64,000 nucleotides of DNA from Macrostomum lignano (taxonomy: Eukaryota): positions 1 to 64,000 of the forward strand of contig NIVC01001076.1 in NCBI GenBank assembly GCA_002269645.1, given 5' to 3'. Positions 5,152 through 56,595 of this stretch are shown in pieces. The position numbers and the translations under genes were made by a program. Below the pieces are notes generated by a model that was given only the letters and a program-made list of their open reading frames with translations, had not been told where the DNA came from and searched no databases. How positions within the stretch are numbered: position 1 is the stretch's first letter; each line of letters opens with the position of its first letter.

Positions 5152-5224
5152 CGACCACGCCAGGACTCGAACCTGGAATCTTCTGATCCGTAGTCAGACG
5201 CGTTATCCATTGCGCCACGCGGCC
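5152..5224 (-). tRNA. tRNA-Arg (anticodon ACG)
   Basis: Reverse complement GGCCGCGTGGCGCAATGGATAACGCGTCTGACTACGGATCAGAAGATTCCAGGTTCGAGTCCTGGCGTGGTCG: 73 nt, acceptor stem pairs, A/B boxes, ACG anticodon, downstream T-run terminator. Confidence 0.95.
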
Positions 5225-7309: not shown

Positions 7310-28338
<21,029 letters not shown>

Positions 28339-38663: not shown

Positions 38664-39991
38664 ATGAGCGGCCTGCACTACAAGAAGGACGGGACGCTGG
38701 ACATGCGCTTTAGCTCATCAAGACAGGCTGCCGCTTCGTACCAGGTGCCTGCTGCTGCTGCAAGCTTCAGCTCTTCGAGCTCGTCTTTTGCTTCCCCGTC
38801 TCGAGGTCTTTGTGGCGACGGTCTGCACTACAAGAAGGACGGATCTCTAGACATGCGCTACAGCTCGTCTAAGCAAGCTGCTGGATCAAGCCAAGCTTCT
38901 GCAGGCAACTATGGTTCACAGAGACCAGCTCCGATCTCTTCACCAGGAGGTAACTATGGCGACGGTCTGCACTACAAAAAAGACGGAACGCTGGACATGC
39001 GCTACAGCTCATCCAAGCAAGCTGCTGGATCAAGCCAAGCTTCTGCAGGTAACTATGGCGACGGTCTGCACTACAAGAAAGATGGAACGCTGGACATGCG
39101 CTTCAGCTCGTCAAAGAAGATAGTATCGAGAGAGGCTGCGCAAGGAGGAACTTCCGGATCCAGTTCCATTGCATCGCGATTCGCTTCGCTGAATGTATCT
39201 CAGCAAGGCAACTACGGCATTCCGTCGAACGTACCAACCAAGAAGGATGGAACGCCTGACATGCGGACGAGTGCAGCCAAGGACTGGGTCGCTGAGCAAG
39301 CTCGAGTCCATGGCGAAAGCGTGCCGAGGTGGGTGCCCCGGCTCAAGGACGGTACCATCAACGAGTTCAGCCCCATTGGCAGGGTCTACAAACAGTCGTT
39401 GCCGCAGGCCAGCTGCGTCGAGTACCAAAAGAGCGACGACCAGCAGCGACGCATGGAGTATTGGGCTCGCCGAATGAGGGAGAACTCCGACTTTCAGACC
39501 CGATTCGAGACCCAGATGGAGGTCGACGTACCGGATCCTGTGCAGTCTGAGATTTCATACCAAAGTGTCGACGAGTCTTCAGAACTCGTCGAGATCGCGG
39601 CCAGTGAGCTGGATAGGATCGAGGAGATCGGCAGAGGCGGCTTCGGAGTCGTTGAAAAAGCCGTCTGGCGCGGCATGCTGGTCGCCGCCAAGCGGCTTCA
39701 TATTGATCGGATGACGCGAACGGACAAGAAGAACTTTCTACAGGAGCTCGAAATCGCCCGCACGCTGCACCTGTTTCAGCATCCCAACCTCGTGGCCACT
39801 CTGGCGTACTGCATCCAACCGCCAATCTTGGTAATGGAGCTGGTAAAGGTCGGCAGCCTCTCCTACGTGCTGCACTACAGCGAGGACGCTGACGTGGAGG
39901 CAAAAATCTGCGACGGTCGCGTTAAGCGCAAATTAGCGTACAACATCGCGGACGGCATGAGGCAGCTGCATTCGGCCGAAATTTGCCACAG
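38664..39991 (+). CDS. Exon 1 of a TKL-group Ser/Thr protein kinase with N-terminal GLHYKKDG(T/S)LDMR repeats
   Basis: IGRGGFGVV Gly-loop, VAAK, FLQELE (alphaC), ending ICH-R; donor AG|gtaaac at 39992 (phase 2). Confidence 0.9.
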
Positions 39992-40128
39992 GTAAACATC
40001 AAGGAGGACTTATTGGACCTTTTTAGAAGCACTCAGTAAAATTGCATTTTGTTTCGTCTTAGGTGTCTGAAGCTTGTGACTGTTTGCTCATTTTTGGAAA
40101 ATTTTCAAGAATATGCAGCTTTTCTGCA

Positions 40129-40996
40129 AGTAGAATGCATGAGGGGGCTTCTGGGACAAAATTTTTCACCTCCTCCATAATCCCATTAAATCCATCCATA
40201 TTATCCCTGACAGAATCAGAAAAAAGGGGGGTCGCACTCGCTCACAAAACGTCCTCCATAATCCACCTAAATCCATCCATATTATCCCTGACAGAATCAT
40301 GAAAAAGGGGAGGGGCCGCACTTGCTCCGAAAACTTCGAACATAATCCTATTAAATCCATCCATTACTATCCCTGACAGAATCAGAGCATAACAGATGTC
40401 CACTAACACCTGTTATGCTCATTGACACCGACATCCACCCATAGCATCTTCGAAACAATCAGAAAATAATCTTCATTCTTCTCCCCACATTCAATCCGCA
40501 ACATGAAACCAGATCCCTAAGACTTTAAATCATCAGCGCAGGGTCCTCACCCTTTGAAAAAAAACTAAATTCTCAATAAAAATGTTTCCGATCGTCTCTC
40601 CAGGTTCTTATTACAAAACGCACGAGCCTAATTACAAATCCAAGTACCGATGCAAACTTGAATGCAGCGAGTACATGAGAAAATATTGGCCCGACGTTCA
40701 AATCAATGTTCCTAATATTAATCTAGCTCTCCAAAGACATTGGTTTCATAAGTATGGAGTAACCTATGTAAAAGATTATGACAGCTATTATAACTTTGCA
40801 GAAATCATTAAGCAATTGTGATTTCTTACATTCTCTCAATGATCAACGTCAGTACAAACTCTTCACCGTTGAAATCAACACCCACCCCATCTTCAGTCTC
40901 AAACTGTAGCACAATCTCGTGAATCTCCTTATTACTCAATACAACTCTTTTCACTGGATTTGGTTTCTCTACCACCATCTGTCCTCCAGCAACAGA
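40129..40996 (+). repeat. Left terminal inverted repeat of the Polinton (868 bp)
   Basis: Reverse complement of 55495-56366, with about 3 substitutions and 3 homopolymer length differences; contains 3 copies of an ~85-bp subrepeat at 40170-40385. Confidence 0.97.
40582..40821 (+). CDS. Small Tyr/Lys-rich ORF inside the left TIR (79 aa from ATG); function unknown
   Basis: Open in both TIR copies (partner 55674-55940, one K/R difference). Confidence 0.45.
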   Translation: MFPIVSPGSYYKTHEPNYKSKYRCKLECSEYMRKYWPDVQINVPNINLALQRHWFHKYGVTYVKDYDSYYNFAEIIKQL

Positions 40997-41328
40997 AGAA
41001 ATCGAAAAGCAAACACAAAAGCTTACTAAAAAACATACTGAGTTCATTTATTCACAAGTATATTTACATAAAACAAAGGAAAGGAAAGGAGGAAAGAGCA
41101 GATCTGAAGGCTGCGTACGGCTGTTCAGTCCAAGGACTGGGGGAGTCGCCACACACCCCCAATTACCCCAGCTAATGCTGGTCCGCGACGCGCAAGCTTA
41201 GTTGCATGGCTGGAAATGAATAAGGTAGAGAAAGAACAAGATATTGTAGATCCTCACACAATCCAAAATCGATATTCTTCGGATCCAGAATAATATTGAT
41301 TTTCCTCCCAGTCATTTTGTGAACAGCA

Positions 41329-41757
41329 CTTTCCTGTATTGTCAGGAATTCCTGTATTGTCAGGAATTGGCACGAGTTTAAAAAAAATCCTGGAGATCCA
41401 GGAAAATGTTTAGAAGACTACTATGAGTAGCTTACATTGATAAAATCCTGGAAAAAAATCCAGTAAAAGACTTTCCTGTATTGTCAGGAATTCCTGTATT
41501 GTCAGGAATTGGCACGAGTTTAAAAAAAATCCTGGAGATACAGGAAAGTGTTTAGAAGACTACTATGAGTAGCTTACATTGATAAAATCCTGGAAAAAAA
41601 TCCAGTAAAAGACTTTCCTGTATTGTCAGGAATTCCTGTATTGTCAGGAATTGGCACGAGTTTAAAAAAAATCCTGGAAAAAAAATCTTGGAGATCCAGG
41701 AAAGTGTTTAGAAGACTACTATCAGTAGCTTACATTGATAAAATCCTGGAAAAAATT
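41329..41757. repeat. 142-bp tandem repeat x3 within the Polinton
   Basis: Units start at 41329, 41471 and 41613 (ctttcctgtattgtcaggaattcc...). Confidence 0.92.
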
Positions 41758-42716
41758 TGTTGATAACTAAGAAGTGAATCTTCATCAGCAACAAATGATC
41801 GGCGAAGTTCGTCAAACACCATTTCGGTTCTCATGGCGTAGTTGTTATCCTGGGTCTCCATGGCCGCTCTTGAACAAATTCGCTGGTTCTCAACTTTTTC
41901 ATTGAAGAAATGATGGAGAACTTCTTGAATTCTCTCTGATGCCGGTTCGTTGGCATCTAATCCTTCAACAAGGCGACCATGGAGATTTTCTAGGTCGGTC
42001 GAGTAGAACGTAATTTTTTGTGAACTAAAAACAAAGATTTAATCAAAATAAGAGATTTTTCAATTCTTAACACAGTATAGAATTTCAGTAAGTAAAAAAT
42101 GAATAAACTTACAACATAATGAAATCAGCAGCCACAACGGTGCAGTATTGCGCGACGAAGAACGTGTGCGAGCAAAATGAGCTGAATTTTCTTGCTTGCT
42201 TTAACTAGCTTCCGAGCGATCAATTCCCTCCACCCGCTTCCTTCCCTCCGGTTGTCAAAGCGGAAAGGAATGCACACGTGGAACTTGTACATTCGCAAAA
42301 TCGATTAGAGGGCTACGCCCCCCCCCTCAGCAATAGCAGTTACCCCACCCCCTTCTGCTTCTCAACATTTCAAATGCAGCTGTCGCGTTTGGCCAGGGTT
42401 GAGAATAATAGTTAAACCCTTCCCGACTCAAGCGCCCCTCTCTACCCCCCCCCATATCTTCATACCGTATAGACCAACAAGGCGGGCCACATTCCGAGGC
42501 CAAATCGGCGGGCCAACTGGCCTCGCAATTTGGCCAATAATCAATATCAATCAAGGAATCCCAAGCAGTCCATGCATGCTAATGGCGGCGAAGGGGTTGA
42601 CTTTTTATTTTCTGCTCTTAGCTCTCTGGAGAATGAGAATCTCTCTTGTGCGCAACTCTTTAGGGAATAAAAAACTGTACTTACTCAAATCCACACTTGC
42701 TCATGCCCTTCCCGAT

Positions 42717-43217
42717 TCAAGCGCCCCTCTCTACCCCCAGCTCTTTCAGCAGTCTTCCCAATTTCTTGTTAGGAGCGCACAAAACAAACCCCGCTCCTGA
42801 GCCTCCGCCCTCTCTCCTCGTGCACCAGCCCTCTCTCCCTGTGCACCCGCCCTCGCCTTCAACCCCCAACCCCAACTTTGTTTTACCAAAAATAACAGCT
42901 TTAACTAGCTTCCGAGCGATCGACTCACGAAATCCGCTTGAAGCCCCCATATGGTCTAGTCTCTTAAGCATTTCTTTGTCCCACCGATTCTTCTCCTCAG
43001 GAAAATCTCTATACTTAACGTCGTGCCACATGCAGACAGAGTCTAGCTCGTTCACAGGCTCATGCCCAGGATTTGGATTATCGTTTGTATCTAACTGTAT
43101 TTCAAGTGGATTCAAAGGCCCGCAATATTTATAGCCGGGAAGTGTCCAGCCTTTGTTTGGATGAGGAAGCTTTTCTATCAGTCCATGTGAATCTATTTTA
43201 CCACCAGAGCGCTGCAT
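42717..43217 (-). CDS. Parvovirus-VP1u-type phospholipase A2 domain protein (PLA2X-like)
   Basis: Ca-binding loop LPGYKYCGP and catalytic PVNELDSVCMWHD..Y motif. Confidence 0.85.
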   Translation of the reverse strand: MQRSGGKIDSHGLIEKLPHPNKGWTLPGYKYCGPLNPLEIQLDTNDNPNPGHEPVNELDSVCMWHDVKYRDFPEEKNRWDKEMLKRLDHMGASSGFRESIARKLVKAVIFGKTKLGLGVEGEGGCTGREGWCTRREGGGSGAGFVLCAPNKKLGRLLKELGVERGA

Positions 43218-43247
43218 TATTTTATTTAAAATTTTCTTTTTAAATAA

Positions 43248-44243
43248 ATGACAGATCAGAAACTTAAAAAACTCTACTACAGCGACAAAGGATTCTTTGT
43301 AGGAAAAAATGCAGTCACCAAACTCGCAGAACTAAGTAAGGAACCAAAAGCTAAAGTAGAAAAGTGGCTCTCTAAGCAGGCTGTCTTTCAAGTCTATTTC
43401 CCACCTGTTCAATTTACGAGACCTCACTTTAGCATCTATAAACCTAATGAAGCGCACCAAGCAGACTTATTGTTTCTCCCCAATGACTCAGGTTACAAGT
43501 ATGCTCTTACAATTATTGACATTGCTTCCAGATATAAGGAAGCTCGCCCACTCAAGACGAAGAAGTCAGAAGCAGTTGCAGCCGCCCTCCAAGATATTTA
43601 TAAAAACTCACCCCTTAGTTACCCTGAAATCTTTATGACGGACCCGGGTAAAGAATTCATGGGTGCAGTGATATCACTTCTACATAAGTATGACACAAAA
43701 ATTCGCTATGGCAGAACTGAGCTCCACAGAGACCAGGCTTTTGTGGAAAGATTCAATCTAACTCTAGCCAAGAGGCTATTCACTAAGCAGACAGCAGAGG
43801 AGCTGAAACTAAAAAGTGGCCAATACTATACCAAGTGGACAGACCGGCTCCCCACTGTTATAGAGCAACTGAACAATGAAGTCACGCGCATGACTGAATT
43901 GAAACCGTCCCATGCAATTAAACAAGACACTGTCGAACTTAAGTCATCTCATAGAACAGACACCTCAAACTACCCTAAGCTTCCAGGAGTTGAATCACCA
44001 TACATACTGACAAACTCTGAGTTTCTACGCTTTTTATATCTACCTGGAGAGCTAGAGAAAGACACCAAAAGAAGAGCTACAGATCCATACTTCAGCCTTG
44101 ATGTACATAAAATAGACAGACATTTTACCTCCGACTCTGGAGACTATTACTTTTTATCTCAAACCTTTAACCCTAAATCCCCCACGCGGTCATTCACTAG
44201 AGCTGAACTCCTAGTGATACCGGCTGACACAGAAATTAATTAA
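43248..44243 (+). CDS. Retroviral-type (rve, DDE) integrase, intact
   Basis: HQADLLFL, LTIIDIASRY, FMTDPGKEF, QAFVERFNLTL. Confidence 0.95.
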   Translation: MTDQKLKKLYYSDKGFFVGKNAVTKLAELSKEPKAKVEKWLSKQAVFQVYFPPVQFTRPHFSIYKPNEAHQADLLFLPNDSGYKYALTIIDIASRYKEARPLKTKKSEAVAAALQDIYKNSPLSYPEIFMTDPGKEFMGAVISLLHKYDTKIRYGRTELHRDQAFVERFNLTLAKRLFTKQTAEELKLKSGQYYTKWTDRLPTVIEQLNNEVTRMTELKPSHAIKQDTVELKSSHRTDTSNYPKLPGVESPYILTNSEFLRFLYLPGELEKDTKRRATDPYFSLDVHKIDRHFTSDSGDYYFLSQTFNPKSPTRSFTRAELLVIPADTEIN

Positions 44244-44259
44244 AATATTAAAATAAAAA

Positions 44260-44718
44260 ATGACAAAGATTGAAACCAGAACCATCAATAAACTCAATAA
44301 AATCATTGAATCAAAGAAACCAGGTCTTATATCAATTAAAGGTATCAAAGTAAAAATCGATCCCACGCAGCAAATACTTCAGTGTAATGAGCAAAGACAC
44401 AGCATCACAGATGAAAAGTCAGGAGGAATCCTACCATTAGCAGCTCTTATTCCAATCATTGCAGGCGCTGTGAGTGCCGCAGGTGGTGTAGCTGGAGGTG
44501 TAGCAACTGCCGTTAAAGCTGGGAATGATAGAGCCCACCAGCTTGAATTGCAAAAGATTGCAAGAGACAAAGGTATAACAATTAAGGCAGGAGATGGTTG
44601 CCCTGAGGGCTGCCCCGATCGTGATGATTTTGAGCATGAAAATTCTGTAAGCAAGTCTGACATTGTCAAAGCCATCATGACACTGCACAATGCTGGGTTT
44701 ACAATAATGCGCATGTGA
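44260..44718 (+). CDS. Adenovirus pX/mu-like core protein candidate
   Basis: KSGG-ILPLAALIPIIAGAVSAAGGVAG resembles the adenoviral pX C-terminal GG(I/F)LP.LIP.IAAAIGA motif. Confidence 0.6.
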   Translation: MTKIETRTINKLNKIIESKKPGLISIKGIKVKIDPTQQILQCNEQRHSITDEKSGGILPLAALIPIIAGAVSAAGGVAGGVATAVKAGNDRAHQLELQKIARDKGITIKAGDGCPEGCPDRDDFEHENSVSKSDIVKAIMTLHNAGFTIMRM

Positions 44719-44844
44719 TGAGGTTTAAAACCCCACTTTATCCAGCTTCATAAACCTAATACTACTGATAGGATGTAGAAACAGTTCAACTTTTCTATCA
44801 GGGTGGTCACCCTCAAAAATTTTTTTTTATTTTAGAGAAAAAAA

Positions 44845-47800
44845 ATGCCAAAAGCCAATCCAGCAAGAGATTTAGTCAACAAATATTTTTCAAAAGGTGT
44901 CTCATTTCAAGACAAAAGTAATTTACTAAGAGAAGCATGTAAACAAACGTTTAACACAGACCCTGGTCACCTGGGAAGCTATGAAAAACAGTTGGAAATC
45001 ATCAATCAATTAGAATCCAACCAGTATGCGCCTATAAAAATCCTGCAAAAGAACACCAAGAGAGGAGTCGCAACTTAGTTAACAAATATGAAACTCTCAC
45101 TGGTGAAAAAGCAAAGTACCCACAAAATAAGCAGGAACAAGAGAAATTAGAGCAATTAATCCATTTAAAAGAGTCGGAGCTTGCCATTGAAGAGATTAAT
45201 TTTGCACAGAGAAAGTTTACAGAACATTACATAGAGTACACAATCCCAATTAAGGATACCACCGCAAACATCTACGACTATAAAGACAGCATCCAATCAG
45301 TTGTTGATCACACACTCAAAACACGCAAGACCTTTAAACTACAGATATCATTCAAGATTGCGTTTTATATTCCTTCAAAACCCACTGAGCATCTCGAGTA
45401 TTACATTACAACAAAGGCGAAGCCATTCACCCCTACAGACACACTGGATCCTTTCCTTCAAGATGTCACTAAGAAAATTGAAGCGTTTACATCCAGAGGT
45501 TCCGCATGGGTCGTGGGAGGGATTCAAAGAGCGACTGTCATGGTCATGAAATATGACCCACTTAAAGCCTCCTCTTATATAGAGCTCCCGCATAAGCTAG
45601 CCGGCAAAAAAGCTTGCATAAATGTTAAAAATAAAGACAATTGCTGTGCTCTGTGGGCAGTTCTTTCTGCACTTTTTCATGATAGTGTCCCTCACCACCC
45701 CGAAAGAACCTCAAATTATCAAAATTATTTCAACTACTATCTTATCGAATGCGAAAAGAAGGGAATCAGGTTTGACAAAGGAGGCTTGGCGATCTCTCAG
45801 ATCTCAAAGCTAGAAGAAGTGTTTAATAACAAAATTAGAATCACAGTCTTTGAATGGAGTGAAAAAACTGAGAAAGTTCAACCGGTCAGATGTAGCAAAG
45901 ACGTTTTAGATCCCCGAGGGGAAAAGGCGGACTGAAGTGGATCTTCTAGTGATTGGTAATTTACTAGAGGAGGCTCACTATGTTTGGATTAAAGATCTTT
46001 CAAGACTCATTCACAAGCAGTTGAATAATCATCACGAGGCTGTTGCCATCTGCCGCTTGTGCCTTAAGCATTACAGTGGACCTGAACGCTTTGAAAAACT
46101 AACAGAGCATGAATTATCATGCGAGGATCACCCGACAAACTGCTCTCTTCCTTCAGCTGAAGAGAAGTATCTCCGGTTTAAGAACTATCACAAGATGGAG
46201 AAGCTCCCATTTGTTGTATATGCTGATTTCGAATGCTCAATCATGCCAGAAACTCAAAAACAAACTCAAACACAAAAACAAACTCAAACTCAAAAACATG
46301 TTCCCAATTCAGTAGCATATGCCTTTATTAATACAAAAGGACTTGTTGAGTATAATTATTTCTTTGGAGAGCAGTGTGTGGAGCAGTTTATTGCCAGAAT
46401 GTTAGAGTTGCAAAAAGTGATTAGCACCCTTCAACCTGTTCCAATAATGATGACTGAGGAGGATGAAAGCAATTTCCTATCAGCAACTCATTGCCACATC
46501 TGCAGGAAACATTTAACTTGCACTGATATTAAAAACCCCACCGTTAGGGACCACTGCCACTTTACTGGGAAATTTAGAGGTGCAGCGCATAACACCTGTA
46601 ATCTAAAGCTAAAATCGAACATTCATGATCTAACGATATTTTGTCACAACGCAAAGAACTATGACATGCATTTAATAGTTGAAAAAATCGGCATGATTCC
46701 AGACATACACCTTGACTGCATCGCAGAGAACAAGGAGAAGTTTAAGTGTGTTGATATTAAACAGGATAATTCGGGTAAAGGTGAAGGTTCGGGTACAGGT
46801 AAAATAAGACTGAAGGATTCATATCAATTTCTAGCTGCCAGTCTAGACGAACTAAGCAAGAATCTAAAAGATGAACAATGTACATATACAAAGATGTTTG
46901 CAAGTAAAATTTACAACAGTGATGAATCATTTAAACTCCTGAGAACCAAAGGCTTCTACCCCTATGAAAATATTACTGGGTATCACGTATTTGAAGAAGG
47001 TTTACCACCACAGGAGAAGTTCTTTTCAAAGCTAACAGACTCTGGAATCTCTGACAAAGACTATGAGCACGCGAAGCATGTCTATAATTACTTTAATTGT
47101 CAAAACTTCTTCCAGTATCACCTGCTTTACCTCTTCACAGATGTGTTTCTGCTGGCCGATGTGTTTGAAACCTTCAGATATACCTGGTACACAGCATATG
47201 GCCTCGATCCAGCACATTATGTGTCTCTGCCTGCCACTAGCTGGGAATCTTTGCTTAAAATGAAATGGGATCAAGATCCAGATTGGTACATTGAACTTCT
47301 TACAGACATTGACATGTACAATTTTGTCGAATCGTCAAAGCGAGGGGGGATCTCAATTTGCACCCATAGATATGCAAAAGCAAACAATCCCTACATTGAA
47401 TCTTACAATAAGGAGCAGCCCTCAAACTACATTACTTACTTGGACGCTAATAATCTCTACGGGTGGGCGATGAGTCAAGATCTTCCAGTTAGAGATTTTC
47501 GATGGCTACCCTCATCAGAATTCAAACGGGACTTTTCATTGGCTGCCATTTATGAAGTTGATGTTTACATTCCACCAGAGCTTCACGACTATTTCTCTGA
47601 CTTTCCACCCTTCCCAGAGAACATCAAGTGCCCGAAAATAATCGAAACTCCCAATGATAATAATGGAACTTGGCCTGTCAGGAACAGAAAAAGAACATAC
47701 AGAGAAACTAACACAGAATCTAAACAACAAGACACGTTACAAAATCCATTACAAACTGCTTCAGTATTTTATCTCACTTGGTTGCAGGGTCACCAAAGTT

Positions 47801-48714
47801 CACCGGGCTCTTACATTTACAGAGGAAGCGTGGATGAAACCCTACATTGATAAGAACACCCAGTTTAGGACCAAAGCAACCAACGACTTTGACAAGAACC
47901 TCTTTAAGTTGGCCAACAACTCTGTCTATGGCAAGACTCTTGAGAATGAGCGGAAAAGAACAAACCTGAAACTTGTTACCTCATCAGAGCCTGCTGTTAT
48001 TCAGGCAAATATGTCAAAGCCAACATTCAAAGAACTCCATATCTTTAATAGCTACTTAGGTGTGATCATATTTTACAAAACCAAGGTGACGCTGCGCAAG
48101 CCGATCTATACAGGTGTCACTGTTCTCGACGAATCAAAACGTCTGATGTACCAGTTCTTCTATGGCATGAAGCAGCAGTACAAGGATAAAATGAAACTCT
48201 TGTACACTGACACAGACAGTTTTATTATGGACATTCAAACACAAGACATTTATCAGGACATGCTGCAGCAAAAAGATTTGTTTGACTTGTCTGAGTATGA
48301 TGAATCTTGCAGGACACAGAATGGCGATCAAGTGTTTGACGCCACTAACAAGAAAGTGATTGGGAAAATGAAGGACGAGATTGCTGGTGACATAATCACT
48401 GAATTCATTGGGTTGAGAGCAAAGTCCTATTTTGTAAAATGTGAGTCGTCAGACCCAATCAAAAAATCAAAGGGAATTCCGAAACGTGTGTTAGGAAGGA
48501 AATTAATGAAGCTGAATACAGAGACGCCTTGAATTGCAACAAAAAGACATCACATGAGTTCTCAAAGCTACAATCTAAAAACCATATTATTCACACAATT
48601 CAGCAAAAGAAGATTGGACTGTCAGGTGCAGATAACAAGAGATTCATTTTTGATGACAACATTAACAGTCTACCGTTCGGGCATTGGAGATTAGGCTTAG
48701 GAGGTGGAAGTTAG
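44845..48714 (+). CDS. polB: Protein-primed family B DNA polymerase, broken by 4 apparent frameshifts (~45030, ~45935, ~47650, ~48495)
   Basis: Exonuclease VYADFE, HNAKNYDMH, LKDSYQFL; endonuclease VII-like CHIC..RDHCHFTGKFRGAAHNTCN; polymerase YLDANNLYGWAMS, KLANNSVYGKT, YTDTDS, EFIGLRAKSY; C-terminal LSGADNKR..LPFGH. Confidence 0.95.
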
Positions 48715-48789
48715 ATTCGGGCACTGGAGATTAGGAGATTAGGAGATTGGGTTTAGGTTTAAGAGAAAGTTTAATAAACCTCATAAAAA

Positions 48790-49189
48790 ATGACGACAAA
48801 TAACTTTCTTGAAGATTTGGCTAACGAACTGGAAATCCCAAACTTTAGAGGAATATTTATGAGGGACACTCTGCCTGATTTTCCTCTAAGAAAGAATGCG
48901 GCATCATGAACTTTGACACCACCGATAAGCCAGGATCTCATTGGGTTTGCTGGGTGATTGATCCCGATCGCAAGCACAAGTGTTATTACTTCGATAGCTA
49001 TGGGACGGCAGTACCAGAAGAGCTAAGAAATTATATGAAGGGGAAAAAAATAAAAAAATTTATCGCTCAGACTTTATTCTCCAAGGTCTTAGCAGTGATA
49101 TTTGCGGTGAGCTGTGCATGACTGTTTTGTATGCAATGACCAAAACACGAAAGACCTACAAGGAAATTATTCTTGGCTGTGTTTCATAG
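48790..49189 (+). CDS. Adenain-like (C5) cysteine maturation protease, 2 homopolymer frameshifts
   Basis: Reconstructed MTTNNFLEDLANELEIPNFRGIFMRDTLP..ECGIMNFD..PGSHWVCW..YYFDSYG..QGLSSDICGELC gives the His/Asp/Gln/Cys catalytic set. Confidence 0.85.
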
Positions 49190-49192
49190 GGT

Positions 49193-49906
49193 TCATTGTG
49201 CATTCCTCGTCGTCCTTCTCGTTGTCCTTCTTTCCACATAATGTTGAAGAACTTTCTCGAGTTCATTTCTCAGCTGACTCATGTCATCAGTACCGACCAT
49301 GTTCAAGTTCATTCGAATTGATTGTTCATAAAGATCCTGAATGGTTTTGAACTCATCCTCTGAAATGAACTTATCCTCGATTGCCCTTGAAATGTACCCT
49401 ATGATTGATGTGTGCACCCCTTTCTCTTTTACTTGCTTCTCCTGTAGCTGCTTTAGTTTTTTTCGCCTGTTTCGCGCTACTGCTCCAGTAATTGCTGAAA
49501 TAAGTCCACATGCAGCACCTACTGAACCAAGTGGAATTGCGATTGGGGCTGTGATGGCTGGCAACACTGAGACAGCTGCAGCAGATCCAGATAGAACAGA
49601 CACAGATCCTAGAATCATATTGCTGTAGTCGAAAAATTTACAGTGGCTGTCATAGCGCTTAATTTTCTTTGTGTTGTGAAAAATATTTTTTTCAAGATCA
49701 TCTCGCATTTTTTGAATCTCCACCAGTCGAAACTGTTGAGAGTTACAAGTAATGACGGGGTAGAGTTTTTGTTGCTCATATTGGGGTGCATTCAGATTCG
49801 GTGCCAGGTTTTGTGTGTTCGAATTCGGTGCCATTGAGTTTGGTGCTGTCGGTATTTTAGGTTCAACGTATTGAGACTGATCGTATAGAGAATTTTGTTG
49901 GGCCAT
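49193..49906 (-). CDS. Polinton membrane protein (two hydrophobic helices plus coiled coil) with N-terminal PTAP and LYP motifs
   Basis: Hydrophobic MILGSVSVLSGSAAAVSVLPAITAPIAIPLGSVGAACGLISAITGAV followed by basic RNRRKKLK; resembles the protein described in adintoviruses as gasdermin-X-like (from memory). Confidence 0.7.
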   Translation of the reverse strand: MAQQNSLYDQSQYVEPKIPTAPNSMAPNSNTQNLAPNLNAPQYEQQKLYPVITCNSQQFRLVEIQKMRDDLEKNIFHNTKKIKRYDSHCKFFDYSNMILGSVSVLSGSAAAVSVLPAITAPIAIPLGSVGAACGLISAITGAVARNRRKKLKQLQEKQVKEKGVHTSIIGYISRAIEDKFISEDEFKTIQDLYEQSIRMNLNMVGTDDMSQLRNELEKVLQHYVERRTTRRTTRNAQ

Positions 49907-49998
49907 TTTTTTCTCTAGAAAAAATAAAAAAAATTATAAAACTATCCGGTTGAAAGATCTGTTTTCTTTTTGATAATTCCATCTGCACCGCCGGTTGT

Positions 49999-50808
49999 CT
50001 AGGCGGCTCTCGTGACGCCGGAGGATCGCGAGTCCAGCAGGCAGCGGCTGGGCGGCTGACGTTTGAGAGCGTGCCGGATTACTCCGGCGGGGTCCAGAGC
50101 TCCTTCTACTCTATCTGTAGACATGACCGGACGAGCAGCAGATTCTGCTTCATCAATAGCAATATCACGAAGATTGAGTGTTCTCTCCAGACGATCAAGC
50201 CTCCTTATTATTTTACCCCAAGAGCTATACATTCCGTTTAGATAGCTACTGTGTGATACATCCTTTCTCTTTAATGCTTCAAGTCTTTCTTTGATTCGAT
50301 CATGCAACGATGTTGACTGAGTCATGAACTCTTCTAAATTCCTCACTTTACCTGTGTTGGTTGCGACGTTTTCTTTAATTCTATCATGCAACGCTGTTGA
50401 CTGGTTCATGAACTCTTCTAAATTATTTACTTTAGCTGTGTTTGTGAAAACTCCTCCTTCGAGAATACGCATCCGTCTATCAGTGGAATTTCCCAGAAGA
50501 TTAACTGATGATCTCAAGCCGTTGATTAGCGAGACTATCGAAGTTATTTCTGACCTTAGTTCATTAGTTGCGTTTAACAACGGCACATAAAGCTTATCAC
50601 TTTCAAACTTCTGCCTAGCTACTTTAAGCCTGAGATCTTCCATGTTTATTTGCAACTGGTGCATGGAGCGCTCTAGGGCTTTCAGTCTGTTTTTATTCAG
50701 TTTGATCTCTGGGATCTCTTCATCGCTGTTAATGTAGCGCTTGTCAAGGAAGGAAGTTGTGAGAGTGCTGTTGCCTGTAGTTGACTCACCTGCAAAGTTT
50801 ATCGACAT
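49999..50808 (-). CDS. Coiled-coil protein, possible fibre/spike
   Basis: Heptad pattern; internal duplication TNT(A/G)KV.NLEEFM.QST.LHDRIKE x2; N-terminal FLDKRYIN. Confidence 0.55.
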   Translation of the reverse strand: MSINFAGESTTGNSTLTTSFLDKRYINSDEEIPEIKLNKNRLKALERSMHQLQINMEDLRLKVARQKFESDKLYVPLLNATNELRSEITSIVSLINGLRSSVNLLGNSTDRRMRILEGGVFTNTAKVNNLEEFMNQSTALHDRIKENVATNTGKVRNLEEFMTQSTSLHDRIKERLEALKRKDVSHSSYLNGMYSSWGKIIRRLDRLERTLNLRDIAIDEAESAARPVMSTDRVEGALDPAGVIRHALKRQPPSRCLLDSRSSGVTRAA

Positions 50809-50824
50809 CTTTTAATAGCAAATT

Positions 50825-51625
50825 TTAAATTACAGTTCTTTTTTCTTTGCTGATAATCACAAACTGGTAAGGCTGATTCCACTTGTCATAGCAAAGATTA
50901 ACGAATTCCTCTTGTGAAATCTTTCTGCTTGAGTTTTTTGTTGGATTTATGAAATAGGCAGGCGCAATGACCTCATTGTAAAATCTTTTTAGCCTGTCCT
51001 GTGGAATGGTTGGAAACAGGAGAATCAGATTGCAGTTCCCACGAATTGTTTTGTTCGGGAGCTCGAACCAATTCTGTGCAATGTAAATTACATTGCAATT
51101 GTTATGTCGCCCTCTTGTAAAATAGTTTTCTATCTGCTTCTGTGGGCCTGTCATACAATCATCAAAGACGATCAAATGCTTTCTCCCCTTTTCTAGCTCA
51201 TCTGGTTGGGGTAGAAGTTTGGTCTTTGGATCAGCCTGTGGATCTCCATAGGTGAACACTTTAATGTTCTGCCATTTTTCATTGTCTTTGAGGTGCTTTG
51301 CATATTCAGCAGCTACAATTTCAGGGTTACTGGGAAGGCTCATTTGGTTATTAAAACATGCAATAATGTCCTCTTTGTGCAGTTTGTTTTGCAATCCAGA
51401 AATCAACATTTTATACTCATCTTGATACAGTGTGGGAGAGTAGATGTGCAGAGTGTCATAGTCGATAAAGCCAGGTCTAAGAAGCATGTTAAAGACTCTG
51501 AATGTTTTACCTGAACCTGATGAACCAACAACAATGCATCTGAAGTGACTCGGAATTGACTCGTGATGAGAAAACTTAATCTGATTACGCGTCCAGTGAG
51601 GATTGAAGTCGTTTGAAAAGTCCAT
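50825..51625 (-). CDS. A32/FtsK-like genome-packaging ATPase, intact
   Basis: Walker A VVGSSGSGKT, Walker B LIVFDD, arginine finger FTRGRH, YIAQ. Confidence 0.95.
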   Translation of the reverse strand: MDFSNDFNPHWTRNQIKFSHHESIPSHFRCIVVGSSGSGKTFRVFNMLLRPGFIDYDTLHIYSPTLYQDEYKMLISGLQNKLHKEDIIACFNNQMSLPSNPEIVAAEYAKHLKDNEKWQNIKVFTYGDPQADPKTKLLPQPDELEKGRKHLIVFDDCMTGPQKQIENYFTRGRHNNCNVIYIAQNWFELPNKTIRGNCNLILLFPTIPQDRLKRFYNEVIAPAYFINPTKNSSRKISQEEFVNLCYDKWNQPYQFVIISKEKRTVI

Positions 51626-51661
51626 TTTTTCTATGAAAAAAAAATTTAAATAATAAATAAT

Positions 51662-51808
51662 TTAGATGTGTCATTTCGGGACTTAGATGTGTCATTTTGG
51701 GACTTAGATGTGTCATTTTGGTACTTAATTGTGTCATTTCGGGACTTAGATGTGTCATTTCGGACTTAGATGTGTCATTTTGGGACTTAGATGTGTCATT
51801 TCGGGACT
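51662..51808. repeat. 21-bp tandem repeat (ttagatgtgtcatttcgggac) x7 upstream of the ATPase start
   Basis: Direct inspection. Confidence 0.93.
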
Positions 51809-51834
51809 AGTCTTGTACCCTCGGAAAGTACCCT

Positions 51835-52224
51835 TTAGTCAAATTTGAAACCACTTCCTTTTTTAATGCTAGCCCTCATCTTCTCATAGACTGCAGGGTC
51901 CACACTGTCTGGATTTGGGGCCAATGGAGCCAGCGGGGCCAGTGGAGGCTGAATCTCTTGTTTAGGTGTTACAGTATCCTTTATCTTTTTGGCTGCTGTG
52001 GCTACACTGCCAGCCGCTTCGGCAACGTTCTTGATGTTCTCTTTGTTCTCTCCAATGACCTTAAAAATCTTGGCCCCCTGAGCGATCAAATCGGCAAGAC
52101 CGTTCCCTGAGCGTTCTTTTCTTGGATAGTGGCCTGCAGGGAAAAGTCCAGATCCGCGTTTAATGAGATTAAGTTCCTCTTTGTCATAGTATTTGTCAAT
52201 GTCTTTTTCGAAAATAATTGGCAT
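51835..52224 (-). CDS. Putative virion core protein with three G-x-G motifs (likely start MPIIFEK)
   Basis: KRGSGL, RSGNGL and KKGSGF motifs; ATG at 52224 preceded by an A-run, like other genes in the element. Confidence 0.6.
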   Translation of the reverse strand: MPIIFEKDIDKYYDKEELNLIKRGSGLFPAGHYPRKERSGNGLADLIAQGAKIFKVIGENKENIKNVAEAAGSVATAAKKIKDTVTPKQEIQPPLAPLAPLAPNPDSVDPAVYEKMRASIKKGSGFKFD

Positions 52225-52240
52225 CTTTTTAAATAGAAAT

Positions 52241-53465
52241 TTATTTTTTGTTGAACCGCGAAAGCAGAAGCTCTCTCGCCCTCTTATCGATGTATTTTCT
52301 CTCAAGCATTTTATTGAGGATGTTGACAAATTCTTTTCTATTCTCATCTTTCATTCCGGTCTTTGCCGCTCCTAGAAGAACCGCTACTCGCTTGTAGATT
52401 TCAGAAATTCCTTTTCCAGTTGAGGGCGGTTGGTCTTGAGGTTGTGGAGTTGGTTGGGCTTGTGGCTGCTGGGGAGGTGATGCAAAAGACTGCTCACTTT
52501 CAGAGATGGAACTGTCATGTGGTGCCTGTCTTTGTTGAGGTGTGAAAACTCTTTGCTTGATTCTGTTCATTCGATCTGGAGAGTGTTGTTCTAAGTGTTG
52601 CCAGTCTGTCGGGTTTTGTTTCTTATATTCAGCACTTTCAAAGGGTCTAACTGCTCGAGTTGACTGAGTACTTGTTCTTCTATGGAATGTTGCTGCTGTT
52701 GTGGCGGTTGCTGTTGCTGTTGTGGTTGTTCTAGATATTTTATGACTTCCGCCTGATCTGGCAAACCGAACCATTGTTTAAAGTGCTTGTACTTTTTGAA
52801 TTTAGTCAGGTTGACACCGCTATCGTACATGTGTTTCAAACTTCTGGGACCTTTAGTATTTCTATATCTCTAACAAGAGAAAAAGTCACTAGATTTCTGT
52901 AGTTCTTTAGCTGCTTCTCAGAGATTTTCTCTTGGTTCTTGGTCATAAAAGTCAGTAAGGTGTCTGTGAAAGGAATTTTCATAGTTTCTGAGCCTTTGAC
53001 AACAGAAATATTTTCCTTATTTATGTCGATATAATATTCCACTGGTTCATTATAAATGTTTCTTCTCCACACACTTATTCCAAATACATATTTCCCATCA
53101 TGTTCTACACGCTCTACTGGTCCAAAAATTATCTGTCACTTTTAGTTCTGTTGTTGTGGTTGTGATTGTTGTGGTTGTGATTGTTGTGGTTGCGGTTGTG
53201 TCTGTGGTTGCGGCAGTATCTGTGGTGCTTCTGGAATTTTGCCCAAAACCTTTTGCACTTGGGTTTCCTGTATGTCGTCGATAGTTTCTTTGACCTGATC
53301 AATATTTTTCTTAGCTTCTCCATACCCGGGCTTATGAAACTCTGTGGCTGCTTGGACAAACTCATTGTAGGATTGTTGCTCCTTATTTATTAGCCCGGTA
53401 ACTCGTTTCTCTGCTTGTGCTAGCTTCTCCAATTCAGATATCTGCTGTGTACTTTTTCGCTTCAT
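52241..53465 (-). CDS. Gln/Pro-rich Polinton protein (about 400 aa if joined), several frameshifts
   Basis: ORFs 53142-53465, 52836-53072, 52591-52839 and 52241-52774 abut in the same direction; C-terminal GKGISEIYKRVAVLLGAAKTG..EFVNILNKML helix motif. Confidence 0.6.
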
Positions 53466-53495
53466 TTCTTATTTTATTTTATTTTTAGTTAAAAA

Positions 53496-54781
53496 ATGAA
53501 CGACCCACTGACACCAGTTTTCTACAAGATTAACAAGCCTATTTTGAGTGATAATAGCACAATCAAAGCGACTCAGGTAAGAGTTCCCAGTCAGGAAAAT
53601 CAGAATGAAACTAATCTTGGTCCTGGTCAAACACTGACATTTACATACAATGGATGTTCGTCTTTGGTTAGTGTGCACAGTCTTAAGAGCGGCTTCCATA
53701 TGACATTTCAATTCAAGACAAAGGGTGGTGCGGATGCGGCTCGTGCTAACGTTGACAAGCATGATGCGGATGTGGCTCTGATCAGTAACTTTTGGGCGTA
53801 CATGTTCAAGGAGTTTAGTGTATCGAATGGGAGCACTGAGTTGGAGCGAATCGCCAACTTTGGAATTGTCTATGACGCTCATTGTTTATCGAGAATCCTG
53901 ATTTTATTCAATTGGGAAGTGGTGCGGGTTTTATTGCAGACGAAAAAGAAGGAGATATCAATGACAGTGGTTATAAAAATAGGAAGAAGAGATACAACTA
54001 TGCATTGCAAGGTGCTGATGATGCTGCTAAGAACCCGCTGTATCGGTCTGTTGATGTATTTGTACCATTGAGATTCATGAGTGGATTCTGTAATACATTT
54101 AATCGACTGACTAGTAACTTTAGCTACACATTTAGACTGACTAGAGATGATCGCAGTAGAGTGTTGTGGACTGGGGCGGACCACACTGGGATGGCTGTGA
54201 AGCTAACCGGAATCGAGCTGTATTTGGAAGTCATTGAGCCAAAGACTGCACTAAAAGCAGACTATCTTAAGGCAATAGAGAAGGACATTGATGTTGCATA
54301 CACGGCCTACATGTGTCGAGATGAGCGAAACGAAACTAGAACAAACATCTGCATTAAAGAGGGATCATGCAGCAATCCAAGGTATATCATTATTAACATG
54401 AGAAACCCAAATAGCATTATACGCTACATGCATGGAGACGTGCGGTCCATTCAGCATGAAATCAGTGATAATCTTTACCCTGCACTGCCACAAAATGGAG
54501 ATTTCAGTCAGAACAAGATTAGCAAATTTTACAGCGAGTTGGTCGACTTGGCTGTGAAAGAGAACAATGGAATTGCTATCACTGCTCTTCAATATGGAAC
54601 TCTATATCCGATGTTTGGCGCTGATGTGTCTGCCAGACAAATGCCTACTGATAACAGCCCTGTGAATATCGTGACTAACATTGAAAGGACTGCCGCAACA
54701 CCCGTGGACCTGTACATTGTCTATGCATTTGAGAGGAAGGTGAAGCTTAACATGATCAACAATTCATCCAGTAAAGTTTAA
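53496..54781 (+). CDS. Major capsid protein (double jelly-roll, hexon-like), 1 frameshift near 53880
   Basis: About 428 aa when joined; beta-rich; DVFVPL..MSGF, PRYIIINMR, YPALPQNGDF, LYPMFGADVS motifs; located upstream of the penton candidate. Confidence 0.8.
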
Positions 54782-54801
54782 ATATTTTTTTAGGACAAAA
54801 A

Positions 54802-56366: not shown

Positions 56367-56595
56367 TCTGCAAGTCGGATTTTAGCTTTAAAGCTAAAAT
56401 TCAAAATGGATTTTTTCACTCCAAAGCCGTGAAAAACACTTGCTACAGTAATACTACATGTGAAGTAGAAAGCACAATCAGGATGTAGAAGCTCGTAAAT
56501 AGGGGTAACGATGGGCATCGCGTGTACTTAACTATCGCTTTTAGGCCTTGGATTGCTTTTAAAAGCAACAGCGCGCTAAAACTTTCTCACTTCAG

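What the first reader, a model, noticed from the sequence alone, without database searches (positions are those of the whole stretch)
38664..39380. Kinase with a tandem KKDG(T/S)(L/P)DMR repeat N-terminus: a possible nucleic-acid-sensing kinase
Seen: four GLHYKKDG(T/S)LDMR(F/Y)SSS copies, plus PTKKDGTPDMRT and a degenerate PRLKDGTINE, joined by Ser/Gly linkers to a catalytically intact TKL-type kinase. I do not recognise this architecture in standard animal kinase families. Inference: these short basic repeats resemble AT-hook-like DNA-binding modules, which would give a repeat-sensor-plus-kinase layout analogous to PKR. The compact gene could also be a horizontal acquisition.
Basis: partly seen in the sequence, partly recalled or inferred. 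Interest (0 to 1): 0.7.

Follow-up and report, generated by a model that had tools for sequence, protein, structure and literature searches.

The report
TKL kinase with uncurated hairpin repeats
A real two-exon animal gene encodes a TAK1/RAF-like protein kinase fronted by six copies of a short, strongly conserved repeat that no database or searched paper describes; the same repeat also sits on nucleases, ubiquitin ligases and PARPs from bacteria to amphioxus, so it is probably a targeting arm, perhaps for DNA or poly(ADP-ribose).

Summary
Four near-identical GLHYKKDG(T/S)LDMR(F/Y)SSS units and two variant units precede a kinase. The single ORF stops inside the catalytic loop. The second half of the kinase lies 16.6 kb downstream, across an intron that now holds a young 16.2-kb Maverick/Polinton element. 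The spliced 609-aa protein is a complete TKL kinase with all catalytic residues, closest to TAK1, CTR1 and RAF. It belongs to a conserved, unnamed repeat-plus-kinase family found in a choanoflagellate, a sponge, bdelloid rotifers, tardigrades, a springtail and oomycetes. AlphaFold predicts each unit as a beta-hairpin with a DG turn plus a short helix, separated by disordered Ser/Gly/Ala linkers. A repeat profile finds 1217 protein clusters. Partner domains include GIY-YIG, XPG/EXO1 and APE-type nucleases, HMG box, PBZ, PARP, RBR/RING/BTB ligases and kinases. No Pfam or NCBIfam model and no searched paper covers the repeat. The only database signal is a sub-threshold match to RsmH, which causes misannotation. 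The AT-hook comparison fails on sequence. A role in binding nucleic acid or poly(ADP-ribose) is plausible from the partner domains but untested. Recent horizontal acquisition is not supported.

The parts
38664..39991 (+). Exon 1: start codon, repeat array, pre-kinase domain and kinase N-lobe up to His-Arg(AG|) of the catalytic loop
   Evidence: ORF list. Donor is CAC AG|GTAAAC. Homologs align through 39989.
38670..38723 (+). Repeat 1, GLHYKKDGTLDMRFSSSR (aa 3-20)
   Evidence: AF2 predicts a hairpin at aa 6/12 and a helix at 17-24.
38820..38873 (+). Repeat 2, GLHYKKDGSLDMRYSSSK (aa 53-70)
38964..39017 (+). Repeat 3, GLHYKKDGTLDMRYSSSK (aa 101-118)
39063..39116 (+). Repeat 4, GLHYKKDGTLDMRFSSSK (aa 134-151)
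39225..39311 (+). Variant repeat 5, SNVPTKKDGTPDMRTSAAKDWVAEQA... (aa 188-216). It is of the 'P-type' that dominates outside the kinase family.
   Evidence: pLDDT is 92-98 in AF2.
39327..39395 (+). Variant repeat 6, RWVPRLKDGTINEFSPIGRVY... (aa 222-244), degenerate hairpin plus helix
39405..39521 (+). Helical pre-kinase segment (aa 248-286). Together with repeats 5-6 it is predicted confidently (pLDDT 92-98 over aa 189-249), possibly as one compact domain; no contact data were available.
   Evidence: AF2 of aa 180-309 alone gives mean pLDDT 83. No structural relative in PDB or BFVD.
39591..39991 (+). Kinase domain, first part: G-loop GRGGFG, VAAK Lys343, alphaC Glu361, His442 and first two bases of Arg443
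39992..56595 (+). Intron (phase 2), 16,604 nt. It was 360 nt before the transposon insertion.
   Evidence: GT...AG ends; removing the intron restores CAC AGA GAT = HRD. The spliced product covers Pkinase 3-258/263 at 159.6 bits.
40129..56366 (.). Maverick/Polinton-like element within the intron. TIRs at 40129-40996 and 55495-56366 (99-100% identical). 6-bp target-site duplication TCTGCA at 40123-40128 and 56367-56372.
   Evidence: Genes: rve integrase, protein-primed PolB, A32-like ATPase, double-jelly-roll capsid-like, PLA2-like.
56596..57097 (+). Exon 2: rest of the kinase (DLKPQN, DFG 462-464, APE 499-501, C-lobe, C-terminal VIPNGG) and stop TGA at 57095-57097
   Evidence: tblastn of five homologs at 56597-57070, E down to 3e-50. 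Sequence.

Best explanation
SHOWN: this is a resident two-exon animal gene for a 609-aa, catalytically competent TKL-group Ser/Thr kinase, closest to TAK1, CTR1 and RAF. It belongs to a conserved but unnamed family with a fixed layout. The layout is an N-terminal array of about 20-residue units (L-H-Y-K-K-D-G-x-L-D-M-R-Y-S-S-S-K), then two variant units and a helical segment predicted with high confidence, then the kinase. PREDICTED: each unit is a beta-hairpin with a D-G turn followed by a short helix, and the units sit like beads on disordered Ser/Gly/Ala linkers. SHOWN: the unit is a promiscuous module, with 1217 clusters matching its profile. It is attached at protein termini to many catalytic domains: nucleases, RBR/RING/BTB ubiquitin ligases, PARP-like domains and kinases. 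It also accompanies HMG and PBZ modules. INFERRED: the array is a multivalent targeting or sensor arm that binds a repetitive or polymeric ligand. From the partner domains, the ligand is most likely DNA/chromatin, RNA or poly(ADP-ribose). Binding would concentrate kinase molecules, so they activate by proximity and phosphorylate local substrates. This works like PKR on dsRNA or TAK1 on polyubiquitin, but the protein is not a member of either family.
For: Gene and splice; one search gives Pkinase 159.6 bits over model positions 3-258/263. TKL identity: TAK1 E=4.6e-36, CTR1 7e-32, BRAF 4e-27 by sequence; Foldseek TAK1 2eva E=4e-17, TMt 0.76. All family-invariant catalytic residues are present. 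Family: 150 hits, best E=3e-112, full-length alignment at 40-51% identity. Members are named from Rotaria, Adineta, Hypsibius, Paramacrobiotus, Allacma, Ephydatia, Stephanoeca, Phytophthora and Pythium. Unit conservation: 454 units in 120 proteins, with D 99%, M 97%, R 99%, G 96% and H 93%. Within the gene, 29 synonymous against 10 conservative codon changes. Structure: hairpin plus helix per unit at pLDDT 73-82, linkers below 50, variant units 92-98. Promiscuity: 1217, 265 and 58 clusters at E<=1e-3, 1e-10 and 1e-30. The two unit variants are one motif (hhalign probability 98.6%). Partners among 113 proteins: GIY-YIG 10, IBR/RBR 7, kinase 5, BTB/BACK 4, HMG box 3, RING 3, Exo_endo_phos 2, PBZ 2, XPG_N 1 (an EXO1 of the coral Desmophyllum), PARP 1. 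A PBZ finger is interleaved within a repeat array in P0157. The repeat region has pI 9.6.
Against: No binding or activity was tested. A unit carries a net charge of only about +2 and matches no known nucleic-acid-binding fold or motif. Most DNA-related partners carry the P-type unit (GPLKKDGTPDMRYKxNK) rather than the L-type unit of the kinases. Other partners (ubiquitin ligases, a GBP/RHD3-like GTPase, a caspase-like domain, UBA) point to signalling or cell death rather than DNA. Bacterial members in Chitinophaga and Phycisphaerales look like small secreted proteins, which a nuclear ligand cannot explain. No model coordinates or PAE were available, so whether the units touch the kinase is unknown. 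Splicing across a 16.6-kb transposon-filled intron is inferred, not observed.
Confidence: 0.45

Rival explanations
1. The repeat is an assembly motif rather than a ligand reader. Hairpin units, together with prion-like Ser/Gly/Tyr linkers, would let motif-bearing proteins (kinase, E3 ligases, PARP-like, nuclease, caspase-like, GTPase) co-assemble into a signalling complex or condensate. RHIM does this for the TKL kinases RIPK1/3, and the two-repeat HET-s motif does it in fungi.
For: The same short motif sits at the extreme N- or C-terminus of many effector types: 88 proteins start with it and 63 of 336 end with it. Partners include caspase-like (P0157), GBP/RHD3-like GTPase (P0168), UBA, RBR and BTB-BACK. 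Most family kinases are non-RD (HGD); from general knowledge, that trait is common in innate-immune kinases. The linkers are low-complexity with GNYG and SYS motifs. Rotifers carry both the kinases and repeat-only proteins.
Against: Units are charged and hydrophilic, unlike known amyloid signalling motifs. Copy number reaches at least 11 regex-counted units, and 24 HMMER-matched stretches, in one protein, which fits avidity for a polymer better than templating. Nuclease, HMG and PBZ partners are typical of DNA transactions. No sensor protein such as an NLR was seen carrying the motif.
Confidence: 0.25
2. The units are regulatory elements of the kinase itself: autophosphorylation sites or pseudosubstrates (R-Y-S-S-S-K) that hold the kinase off or record its activity.
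For: An invariant Arg is followed by a conserved Ser-Ser cluster in the kinase-family variant. The array is always in cis with the kinase in this family.
Against: The same unit occurs in hundreds of proteins with no kinase. In the commoner variant the Ser cluster is replaced by x-x-N-K. In the AF2 model the Ser residues cap a helix.
Confidence: 0.1
3. In this genome the gene is silenced or crippled. The 16.2-kb Maverick in the intron, with promoters and terminators on both strands, would prevent production of a full-length mRNA. Only a truncated repeat-plus-N-lobe product, or nothing, would be made.
For: The element is very young (TIRs 99-100% identical, intact 6-bp TSD), so intact exons say little about function since the insertion. 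No AATAAA or ATTAAA lies within 500 nt after the stop.
Against: Both exons are open. All catalytic residues and canonical splice sites are kept. Large intronic transposons are commonly tolerated.
Confidence: 0.1
4. The gene is a recent horizontal acquisition from a giant virus or a protist.
For: The family distribution is patchy and includes oomycetes nested among animal sequences in a rough NJ tree. Rotifer and metagenome homologs are intronless. Giant-virus-like contigs carry single-copy KKDGTLDMRY ORFs. One motif protein has the NCLDV-type 2-cysteine adaptor.
Against: The window gene has a spliceosomal intron. Its composition (GC 58%, GC3 70%) resembles neighbouring host exons (GC3 57-67%). 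The family is present in a choanoflagellate, a sponge, tardigrades and a springtail. The tardigrade and springtail genes contain introns and sit beside ordinary animal genes. Viral kinases match only the catalytic domain, at 33% identity or less.
Confidence: 0.05

Closest known systems
Unnamed repeat-plus-kinase family (e.g. Hypsibius exemplaris OWA53669.1, Paramacrobiotus XP_055352864.1, Rotaria sordida CAF1004009.1, Allacma fusca CAG7721476.1, Ephydatia muelleri Em0008g1037a, Stephanoeca diplocostata EP00041_P033130, Phytophthora citrophthora KAK1928649.1)
   Same: Same layout end to end: L-type repeats starting at residue 3, two variant units, the LHY(C/S)ED...EAK..DGR(I/V)K insert, and a C-terminal IPN tail. 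Identity is 40-51% over the full length, E down to 3e-112.
   Different: The window protein has HRD where most members have HGD. It carries a lineage-specific intron at that codon. No member has a described function.
TAK1 (MAP3K7) and other TKL kinases (CTR1, RAF, TNNI3K, RIPK)
   Same: Best sequence and structure matches for the catalytic domain, with a Ser/Thr-type HRDLKPQN loop. TAK1 is activated by clustering on a polymer (polyubiquitin, through TAB2/3), which is the kind of mechanism proposed here.
   Different: About 31-33% identity only. There is no TAB1- or TAB2/3-binding region, because the protein ends just after the kinase domain. The N-terminal repeat array has no counterpart in those kinases.
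PKR (EIF2AK2)
   Same: Layout of tandem ligand-binding modules, a flexible linker and a kinase that activates by ligand-induced proximity.
   Different: There are no dsRNA-binding motifs (no Pfam hit). The kinase is TKL, not an eIF2-alpha kinase. Nucleic-acid binding by the repeats is unproven.
AT-hook
   Same: Short, basic, repeated, separated by flexible linkers, and found on chromatin proteins alongside HMG-type domains.
   Different: There is no Arg-Gly-Arg-Pro core and no AT_hook hit. The units contain two invariant Asp and are predicted to fold as hairpin plus helix, not as an extended minor-groove crescent.
RsmH/MraW 16S rRNA m4C1402 methyltransferase, segment around model positions 110-135 (G-F-S-F-x-x-D-G-P-L-D-M-R-M; motif letters recalled from memory)
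   Same: Local similarity of the unit to this conserved segment (PF01795, 24-30 bits; TIGR00006 positions 116-161). The match may extend into the following helix.
   Different: Only about 25 residues match. There is no methyltransferase fold, and the window protein scores below the gathering cut-off (24.4-26.4 against 27). The similarity causes repeat-only proteins to be mislabelled RsmH (P0084 and P0103; P0091 at 29.6 bits).
Short tandem ligand-binding modules such as PBZ and UIM, and the RHIM assembly motif
   Same: About 20-residue modules, often in tandem, spread over many enzyme families as targeting devices. PBZ co-occurs with the repeat and is even interleaved within an array.
   Different: There are no zinc ligands, no UIM or RHIM consensus, and no sequence or structural match.

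Membership tests
Protein kinase superfamily, TKL group | Full-length match to the Pkinase / PK_Tyr_Ser-Thr models above the curated cut-offs | tested here: met
   Spliced protein: Pkinase 159.6 bits (cut-off 31.7), model positions 3-258/263; PK_Tyr_Ser-Thr 151.7 bits.
Protein kinase superfamily, TKL group | Catalytic residues: G-loop, VAIK Lys, alphaC Glu, HRD Asp, catalytic-loop Asn, DFG, APE | tested here: met
   GRGGFG 323-328, K343, E361, H442-R443-D444, N449, D462-F463-G464, A499-P500-E501. All fall in invariant columns of the family alignment.
Protein kinase superfamily, TKL group | Nearest characterised relatives are TKL kinases | tested here: met
   TAK1, CTR1, RAF and TNNI3K lead the sequence search. 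TAK1, BRAF, TNNI3K and RIPK4/2 lead the structure search. No formal kinome phylogeny was made.
TAK1 (MAP3K7) orthologs | C-terminal TAB2/3-binding region and TAB1-binding surface | tested here: not met
   The protein ends 9 residues after the kinase C-lobe motif VIPN. Identity to TAK1 is only about 31-33%.
Unnamed repeat-plus-kinase family | N-terminal L-H-Y-K-K-D-G-x-L-D-M-R-Y-S-S-S-K units, the variant pair IPxxVPxKKDGxPDMRTxAAKxWV / PxWVPRKKDGxxD, the kinase insert LHYCED..EAKMTDGRIKK, and the C-terminal IPN | tested here: met
   All are present and aligned. E=3e-112 to the best member with 99-100% query coverage.
AT-hook | Arg-Gly-Arg-Pro core flanked by basic residues | tested here: not met
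   No GRP in any unit. No AT_hook family at E<=1 on exon 1, E<=10 on a two-unit segment, or E<=0.01 on the spliced protein.
PKR / eIF2-alpha kinases | dsRNA-binding motifs plus a kinase domain of the eIF2-alpha kinase subfamily | tested here: not met
   No dsrm hit. The best kinase relatives are TKL, not EIF2AK.
RsmH/MraW methyltransferase (PF01795) | SAM-dependent methyltransferase fold matched over the model, above the gathering score | tested here: not met
   Only model positions 113-135 of 309 match, at 24.4-26.4 bits against a cut-off of 27.
PBCV-specific basic adaptor domain (PF08789; a lead from memory) | Match to the Pfam model | tested here: not met
   Absent from the listed Pfam hits, even at E<=10, for repeat segments, viral single-copy ORFs and short repeat proteins. 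It could still be among the 13 of 38 families not listed in the census. One motif protein does carry the related NCLDV 2-cysteine adaptor (P0153, 22.5 bits).
DUF7360 (PF24059) | Match above the gathering score | tested here: inconclusive
   A repeat unit of the PARP-linked protein P0105 scores 26.5 bits against a cut-off of 27.6. There is no hit for the window protein. Nothing was found about this DUF.
Maverick/Polinton (the element in the intron) | Protein-primed PolB, rve integrase, packaging ATPase, double-jelly-roll capsid, long TIRs, 6-bp TSD | tested here: met
   PolB_2 43.5 bits, rve 39.7 bits, Pox_A32 27.4 bits (all above cut-off). DJR-like is only 19.5 bits, below its cut-off. TIRs of about 868 bp at 99-100% and TSD TCTGCA. 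An adenain-type protease was not detected.

The most novel reading that the evidence does not exclude
The K-x-D-G-x-[LP]-D-M-R hairpin unit is a previously unrecognised, ancient class of targeting module found from bacteria to chordates. It would read a polymeric nucleic-acid-type ligand: DNA ends or chromatin, RNA, or poly(ADP-ribose). On that reading, this family is a nucleic-acid- or DNA-damage-activated TKL kinase of non-vertebrate animals and oomycetes. Its sister architectures would deliver nucleases, ubiquitin ligases and PARPs to the same sites.
Probability: 0.3. Interest if true: 0.75.

Novelty: new variant of a known kind. Interest (0 to 1): 0.55.

Why it matters
If the inference holds, it defines a new small protein module. 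The module is large in reach: 1217 clusters at 50% identity, found in corals, amphioxus, hemichordates, rotifers, tardigrades, fungi, oomycetes and bacteria. It has no database model and no mention in the papers searched. It would give a handle on how many invertebrate nucleases, E3 ligases, PARPs and kinases are targeted. For the kinase family, it suggests a ligand-clustered MAP3K-like sensor in lineages noted for desiccation and radiation tolerance (bdelloids, tardigrades). That link is speculative. In practical terms, the finding exposes a recurring misannotation of repeat-only proteins as RsmH. It also shows that this kinase gene can be read correctly only across a 16.6-kb intron filled by a transposon.

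Tried and rejected
- AT-hook: no GRP core and no Pfam hit.
- RsmH homology: a 25-residue local match below cut-off, so a misannotation trap. I did not read the RsmH structure papers.
- PBCV basic adaptor domain (from memory): no listed Pfam hit.
- EF-hand loop and tankyrase-binding motif (RxxPDG): rejected by eye, because the key positions are not met.
- Neuralized NHR similarity: E about 1, ignored.
- Giant-virus origin: IMG/VR kinases match only the catalytic domain. The motif pattern finds only single-copy small ORFs, plus at least one chance hit, L090.
- Structural relatives of the pre-kinase domain: none in PDB or BFVD; best E values were 4.6 and 2.3.
- Literature: searches for motif strings, accession numbers and DUF7360 found nothing relevant.
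- Host identification: the exact-protein look-up found nothing. The search with the SHANK-like PDZ exon gave only two weak hits. Rfam and tRNA scans gave one tRNA-Arg. The host remains an unidentified holozoan, most likely an animal.
- Bacterial gene neighbourhood in Chitinophaga: uninformative.
I replaced it with a concatenated-unit probe.
Full report
**Observation.** GLHYKKDG(T/S)LDMR(F/Y)SSS(R/K) occurs at residues 3, 53, 101 and 134. PTKKDGTPDMRT follows at residue 191 and PRLKDGTINE at residue 225. A degenerate DNA pattern for KKDGxLDMR(Y/F) matches four times in the window, against 0.00 expected from shuffles. The copies are 64-89% identical at the DNA level. Across the 18-codon core, 29 codon differences are synonymous and 10 are conservative replacements (T/S, F/Y, K/R). 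The peptide is therefore kept by selection rather than being a fresh duplication. The first 185 residues are 22% Ser, 13% Gly and 11% Ala.

**Gene structure.** The ORF ends at ...AEICHR, followed by GTAAAC, in the middle of the kinase catalytic loop.
- tblastn with five full-length homologs places the missing half of the kinase at 56597..57070, with E down to 3e-50.
- The junction is CAC AG|GTAAAC ... CACTTCAG|A GAT CTC. This is a phase-2 intron whose removal restores His-Arg-Asp.
- The spliced 609-aa product covers the Pkinase model from position 3 to 258 of 263 at 159.6 bits.
- The intron (39992..56595) is 16.6 kb because it contains a Maverick/Polinton-like element at 40129..56366.
- The element has terminal inverted repeats of about 868 bp that are 99-100% identical, and a 6-bp target-site duplication TCTGCA.
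- Read piece by piece, the element carries rve integrase, protein-primed PolB, A32-type ATPase, double-jelly-roll capsid-like and PLA2-like genes.
- Before this recent insertion the intron was 360 nt.
- Splicing across the element is inferred; I have no transcript data.

**Kinase.** All residues that are invariant in the family alignment are present: GRGGFG, Lys343, Glu361, His442-Arg443-Asp444, Lys446, Asn449, Asp462-Phe463-Gly464 and Ala499-Pro500-Glu501. The closest solved relatives by sequence are TAK1 (E=4.6e-36), CTR1 and RAF. By predicted structure they are TAK1 (2eva, E=4e-17, TMt 0.76), BRAF, TNNI3K and RIPK4/2. It is a TKL-group Ser/Thr kinase, not a TAK1 ortholog: identity is about 31-33% and the protein ends just after the kinase domain. 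Most family members have HGD (non-RD), whereas the window protein has HRD.

**The family.** A protein search found 150 relatives, with a best E of 3e-112 and 99-100% coverage.
- Thirty-seven of them align end to end at 34-51% identity with the same layout. The layout is repeats from residue 3, then the variant pair IPxxVPxKKDGxPDMRTxAAKxWV and PxWVPRKKDGxxD, a helical stretch, the kinase with an LHYCED..EAKMTDGRIKK insert, and a C-terminal IPN.
- Named members come from bdelloid rotifers (Rotaria, Adineta, Didymodactylos), tardigrades (Hypsibius, Paramacrobiotus), the springtail Allacma, the sponge Ephydatia, the choanoflagellate Stephanoeca, and oomycetes (Phytophthora, Pythium, Globisporangium).
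- All are labelled only 'protein kinase domain-containing' or 'unnamed'.
- The tardigrade and springtail genes have introns and sit beside kinesin and RabGAP genes. The rotifer and metagenome copies are intronless.

**Unit anatomy.** From 454 units in 120 proteins the consensus is S-G-L-H-Y-K-K-D-G-(T/S)-L-D-M-R-Y-S-S-S-K-x-A. Conservation is H 93%, D 94%, G 96%, D 99%, M 97% and R 99%.
- AlphaFold2 on the family alignment (mean pLDDT 77) gives every unit a two-residue-turn beta-hairpin around Asp-Gly.
- A short helix follows, starting at the Ser cluster, with pLDDT 73-82. The linkers fall below 50.
- The two variant units plus the next helices reach pLDDT 92-98, and they do so even when folded without the kinase. 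They may form a small domain; no contact data were available.
- That domain has no structural relative in PDB or BFVD; the best E values are 4.6 and 2.3.
- Model coordinates and PAE were not available, so contacts with the kinase are unknown.

**The unit is a promiscuous module.** A 21-position profile of the unit, searched against 1.84 billion representatives, finds 1217 clusters at E<=1e-3, 265 at 1e-10 and 58 at 1e-30.
- Outside the kinase family the dominant form is G-P-L-K-K-D-G-T-P-D-M-R-(Y/F)-K-x-N-(K/R).
- Profile-profile comparison shows the two forms are one motif (98.6%). The window protein carries both forms.
- Among 113 of these proteins, the Pfam partners are GIY-YIG (10), IBR/RBR (7), kinase (5), BTB/BACK (4), HMG box (3), RING (3), Exo_endo_phos (2), PBZ (2), XPG_N (1), PARP (1) and RHD3/GBP-like GTPase (1). 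UBA and the 2-cysteine adaptor appeared in the per-protein scans.
- Examples are an EXO1 of the coral Desmophyllum, BTB-BACK proteins of Porites, a 1365-aa amphioxus protein with 24 matched stretches, and a caspase-like protein whose PBZ finger sits inside the array.
- Two chytrid proteins look, by eye, like PD-(D/E)xK nucleases.
- Further hosts include Saccoglossus, Atractiella and chytrids. Bacteria are also represented (Chitinophaga, Phycisphaerales), where small apparently secreted proteins carry three units.
- Arrays sit at protein ends: 88 proteins start with a unit and 63 of 336 end with one.
- Giant-virus-like contigs carry ORFs of about 95 aa with a single unit.

**Comparison with known families.**
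- No Pfam or NCBIfam model covers the unit.
- The only recurring signal is a 25-residue match to a conserved RsmH segment: 24-30 bits against a cut-off of 27. It has led to repeat-only proteins being called RsmH.
- DUF7360 grazes one PARP-linked relative below its cut-off.
- The AT-hook is excluded: there is no GRP core and no hit.
- PKR is excluded as a family: there is no dsRBM and the kinase is TKL. It remains a fair analogy for the layout.
- Searches for the motif strings, accessions and DUF7360 found no relevant paper.

**Horizontal transfer.** The window gene has an intron. Its GC (58%) and GC3 (70%) match the neighbouring SHANK-like exons (GC3 57-67%), while flanks and intron stubs are 36-39% GC. 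The neighbour with a PDZ exon and a proline-rich exon marks the host as a holozoan, most likely an animal. The family spans a choanoflagellate, a sponge and protostomes, so vertical descent with losses explains the animal copies. In a rough NJ tree the oomycete clade nests among animal sequences. That hints at transfer somewhere in the family's history, but the tree is not decisive.

**Mechanism.** What is shown is an intact TKL kinase, a conserved array of small folded units on flexible linkers, and reuse of the unit as a terminal appendage on many enzymes.
- What I infer is that the array is a multivalent targeting or sensing arm for a polymeric ligand, and that binding clusters the kinase for activation by proximity.
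- The partner set (four nuclease classes, HMG box, PBZ, PARP) and the basic pI of 9.6 make DNA/chromatin, RNA or poly(ADP-ribose) the best guess for the ligand.
- I put the layered statement at 0.45, with the nucleic-acid or PAR part alone at about 0.3-0.35.
- The main rival (0.25) is an assembly motif that joins motif-bearing effectors, as RHIM does for RIPK kinases. The ubiquitin-ligase, caspase-like and GTPase partners, the non-RD kinases and the prion-like linkers favour it.
- The secreted bacterial members are not explained by either idea.

**Verdict.** The finding is real and more than ordinary. It is one member of an uncharacterised kinase family carrying an uncurated, widespread repeat module. 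The general idea of a sensor arm on a kinase remains the best working model.

Noticed in passing
window 40129-56366: A young Maverick/Polinton-like element lies inside the kinase intron. It has TIRs of about 868 bp at 99-100% identity and a TSD of TCTGCA. Genes seen: PLA2-like (42717-43217, -), rve integrase (43248-44243, +), Adeno_PX-like (44260-44718, +), protein-primed PolB (45937-47850, +), A32-like ATPase (50825-51625, -). The capsid-like reading frame is divided between overlapping ORFs 53496-54071 and 53882-54781. No protease was detected.
   Followed up: partly
window 7310-13135 (minus strand): A SHANK-like host gene: a PDZ exon (10873-11355; Pfam PDZ 46.6 bits; nearest named relative 'SH3/ankyrin repeat-containing protein'), a long Pro/Gln-rich ORF (7310-8668) and a further ORF (12152-13135). 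It marks the source as a holozoan, most likely an animal. The species could not be identified.
   Followed up: partly
window 5151-5224 (-): A tRNA-Arg (anticodon ACG). It is the only Rfam or ARAGORN hit in the window.
   Followed up: no
window 31416-33110 (+) and 58564-62375 (-): Other mobile elements. A LINE-like ORF with an APE-type endonuclease domain sits in a 64.6% GC block. An LTR-retroelement pol lies on the minus strand (protease and RT at 60414-62375, integrase at 58564-59388).
   Followed up: no
window 1060-4282 (+): A long ORF built from an in-frame 11-aa tandem repeat (DQSASGEIDVR, dozens of copies). It runs into a non-repetitive part of about 450 aa with no Pfam hit. This is either a repeat-rich exon or a satellite that happens to be open.
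   Followed up: no
window 6100-6900, 12100-12850, 14000-14830, 17100-18430, 19750-21080, 22760-24220, 27450-28160: A dense series of mini- and microsatellites with strong strand skew. They produce many spurious long ORFs.
   Followed up: no
L085-L092 (IMG/VR contigs of 38-344 kb): Giant-virus-like contigs encode ORFs of about 85-110 aa with a single K(R/H/Y)KKDGTLDMRY unit followed by a helix-like stretch. Two of these contigs also carry a TKL-like kinase elsewhere (L010, L012). This could be viral mimicry or capture of the host motif.
   Followed up: partly
P0084, P0103, P0091 (relatives, not in the window): Repeat-only proteins are annotated as '16S rRNA C1402 N4-methylase RsmH', or score as such: P0091 reaches 29.6 bits against the Pfam cut-off of 27. 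The cause is the unit's resemblance to the DGPLDMRM segment (letters from memory). This is a systematic misannotation.
   Followed up: yes
L093 11822-13610 and L003 16968-17872: In a tardigrade and in one metagenome contig, a second kinase of the same family lies a few kb downstream of the first. These look like tandem paralogs. The tardigrade copy appears to lack most of the repeat array.
   Followed up: no
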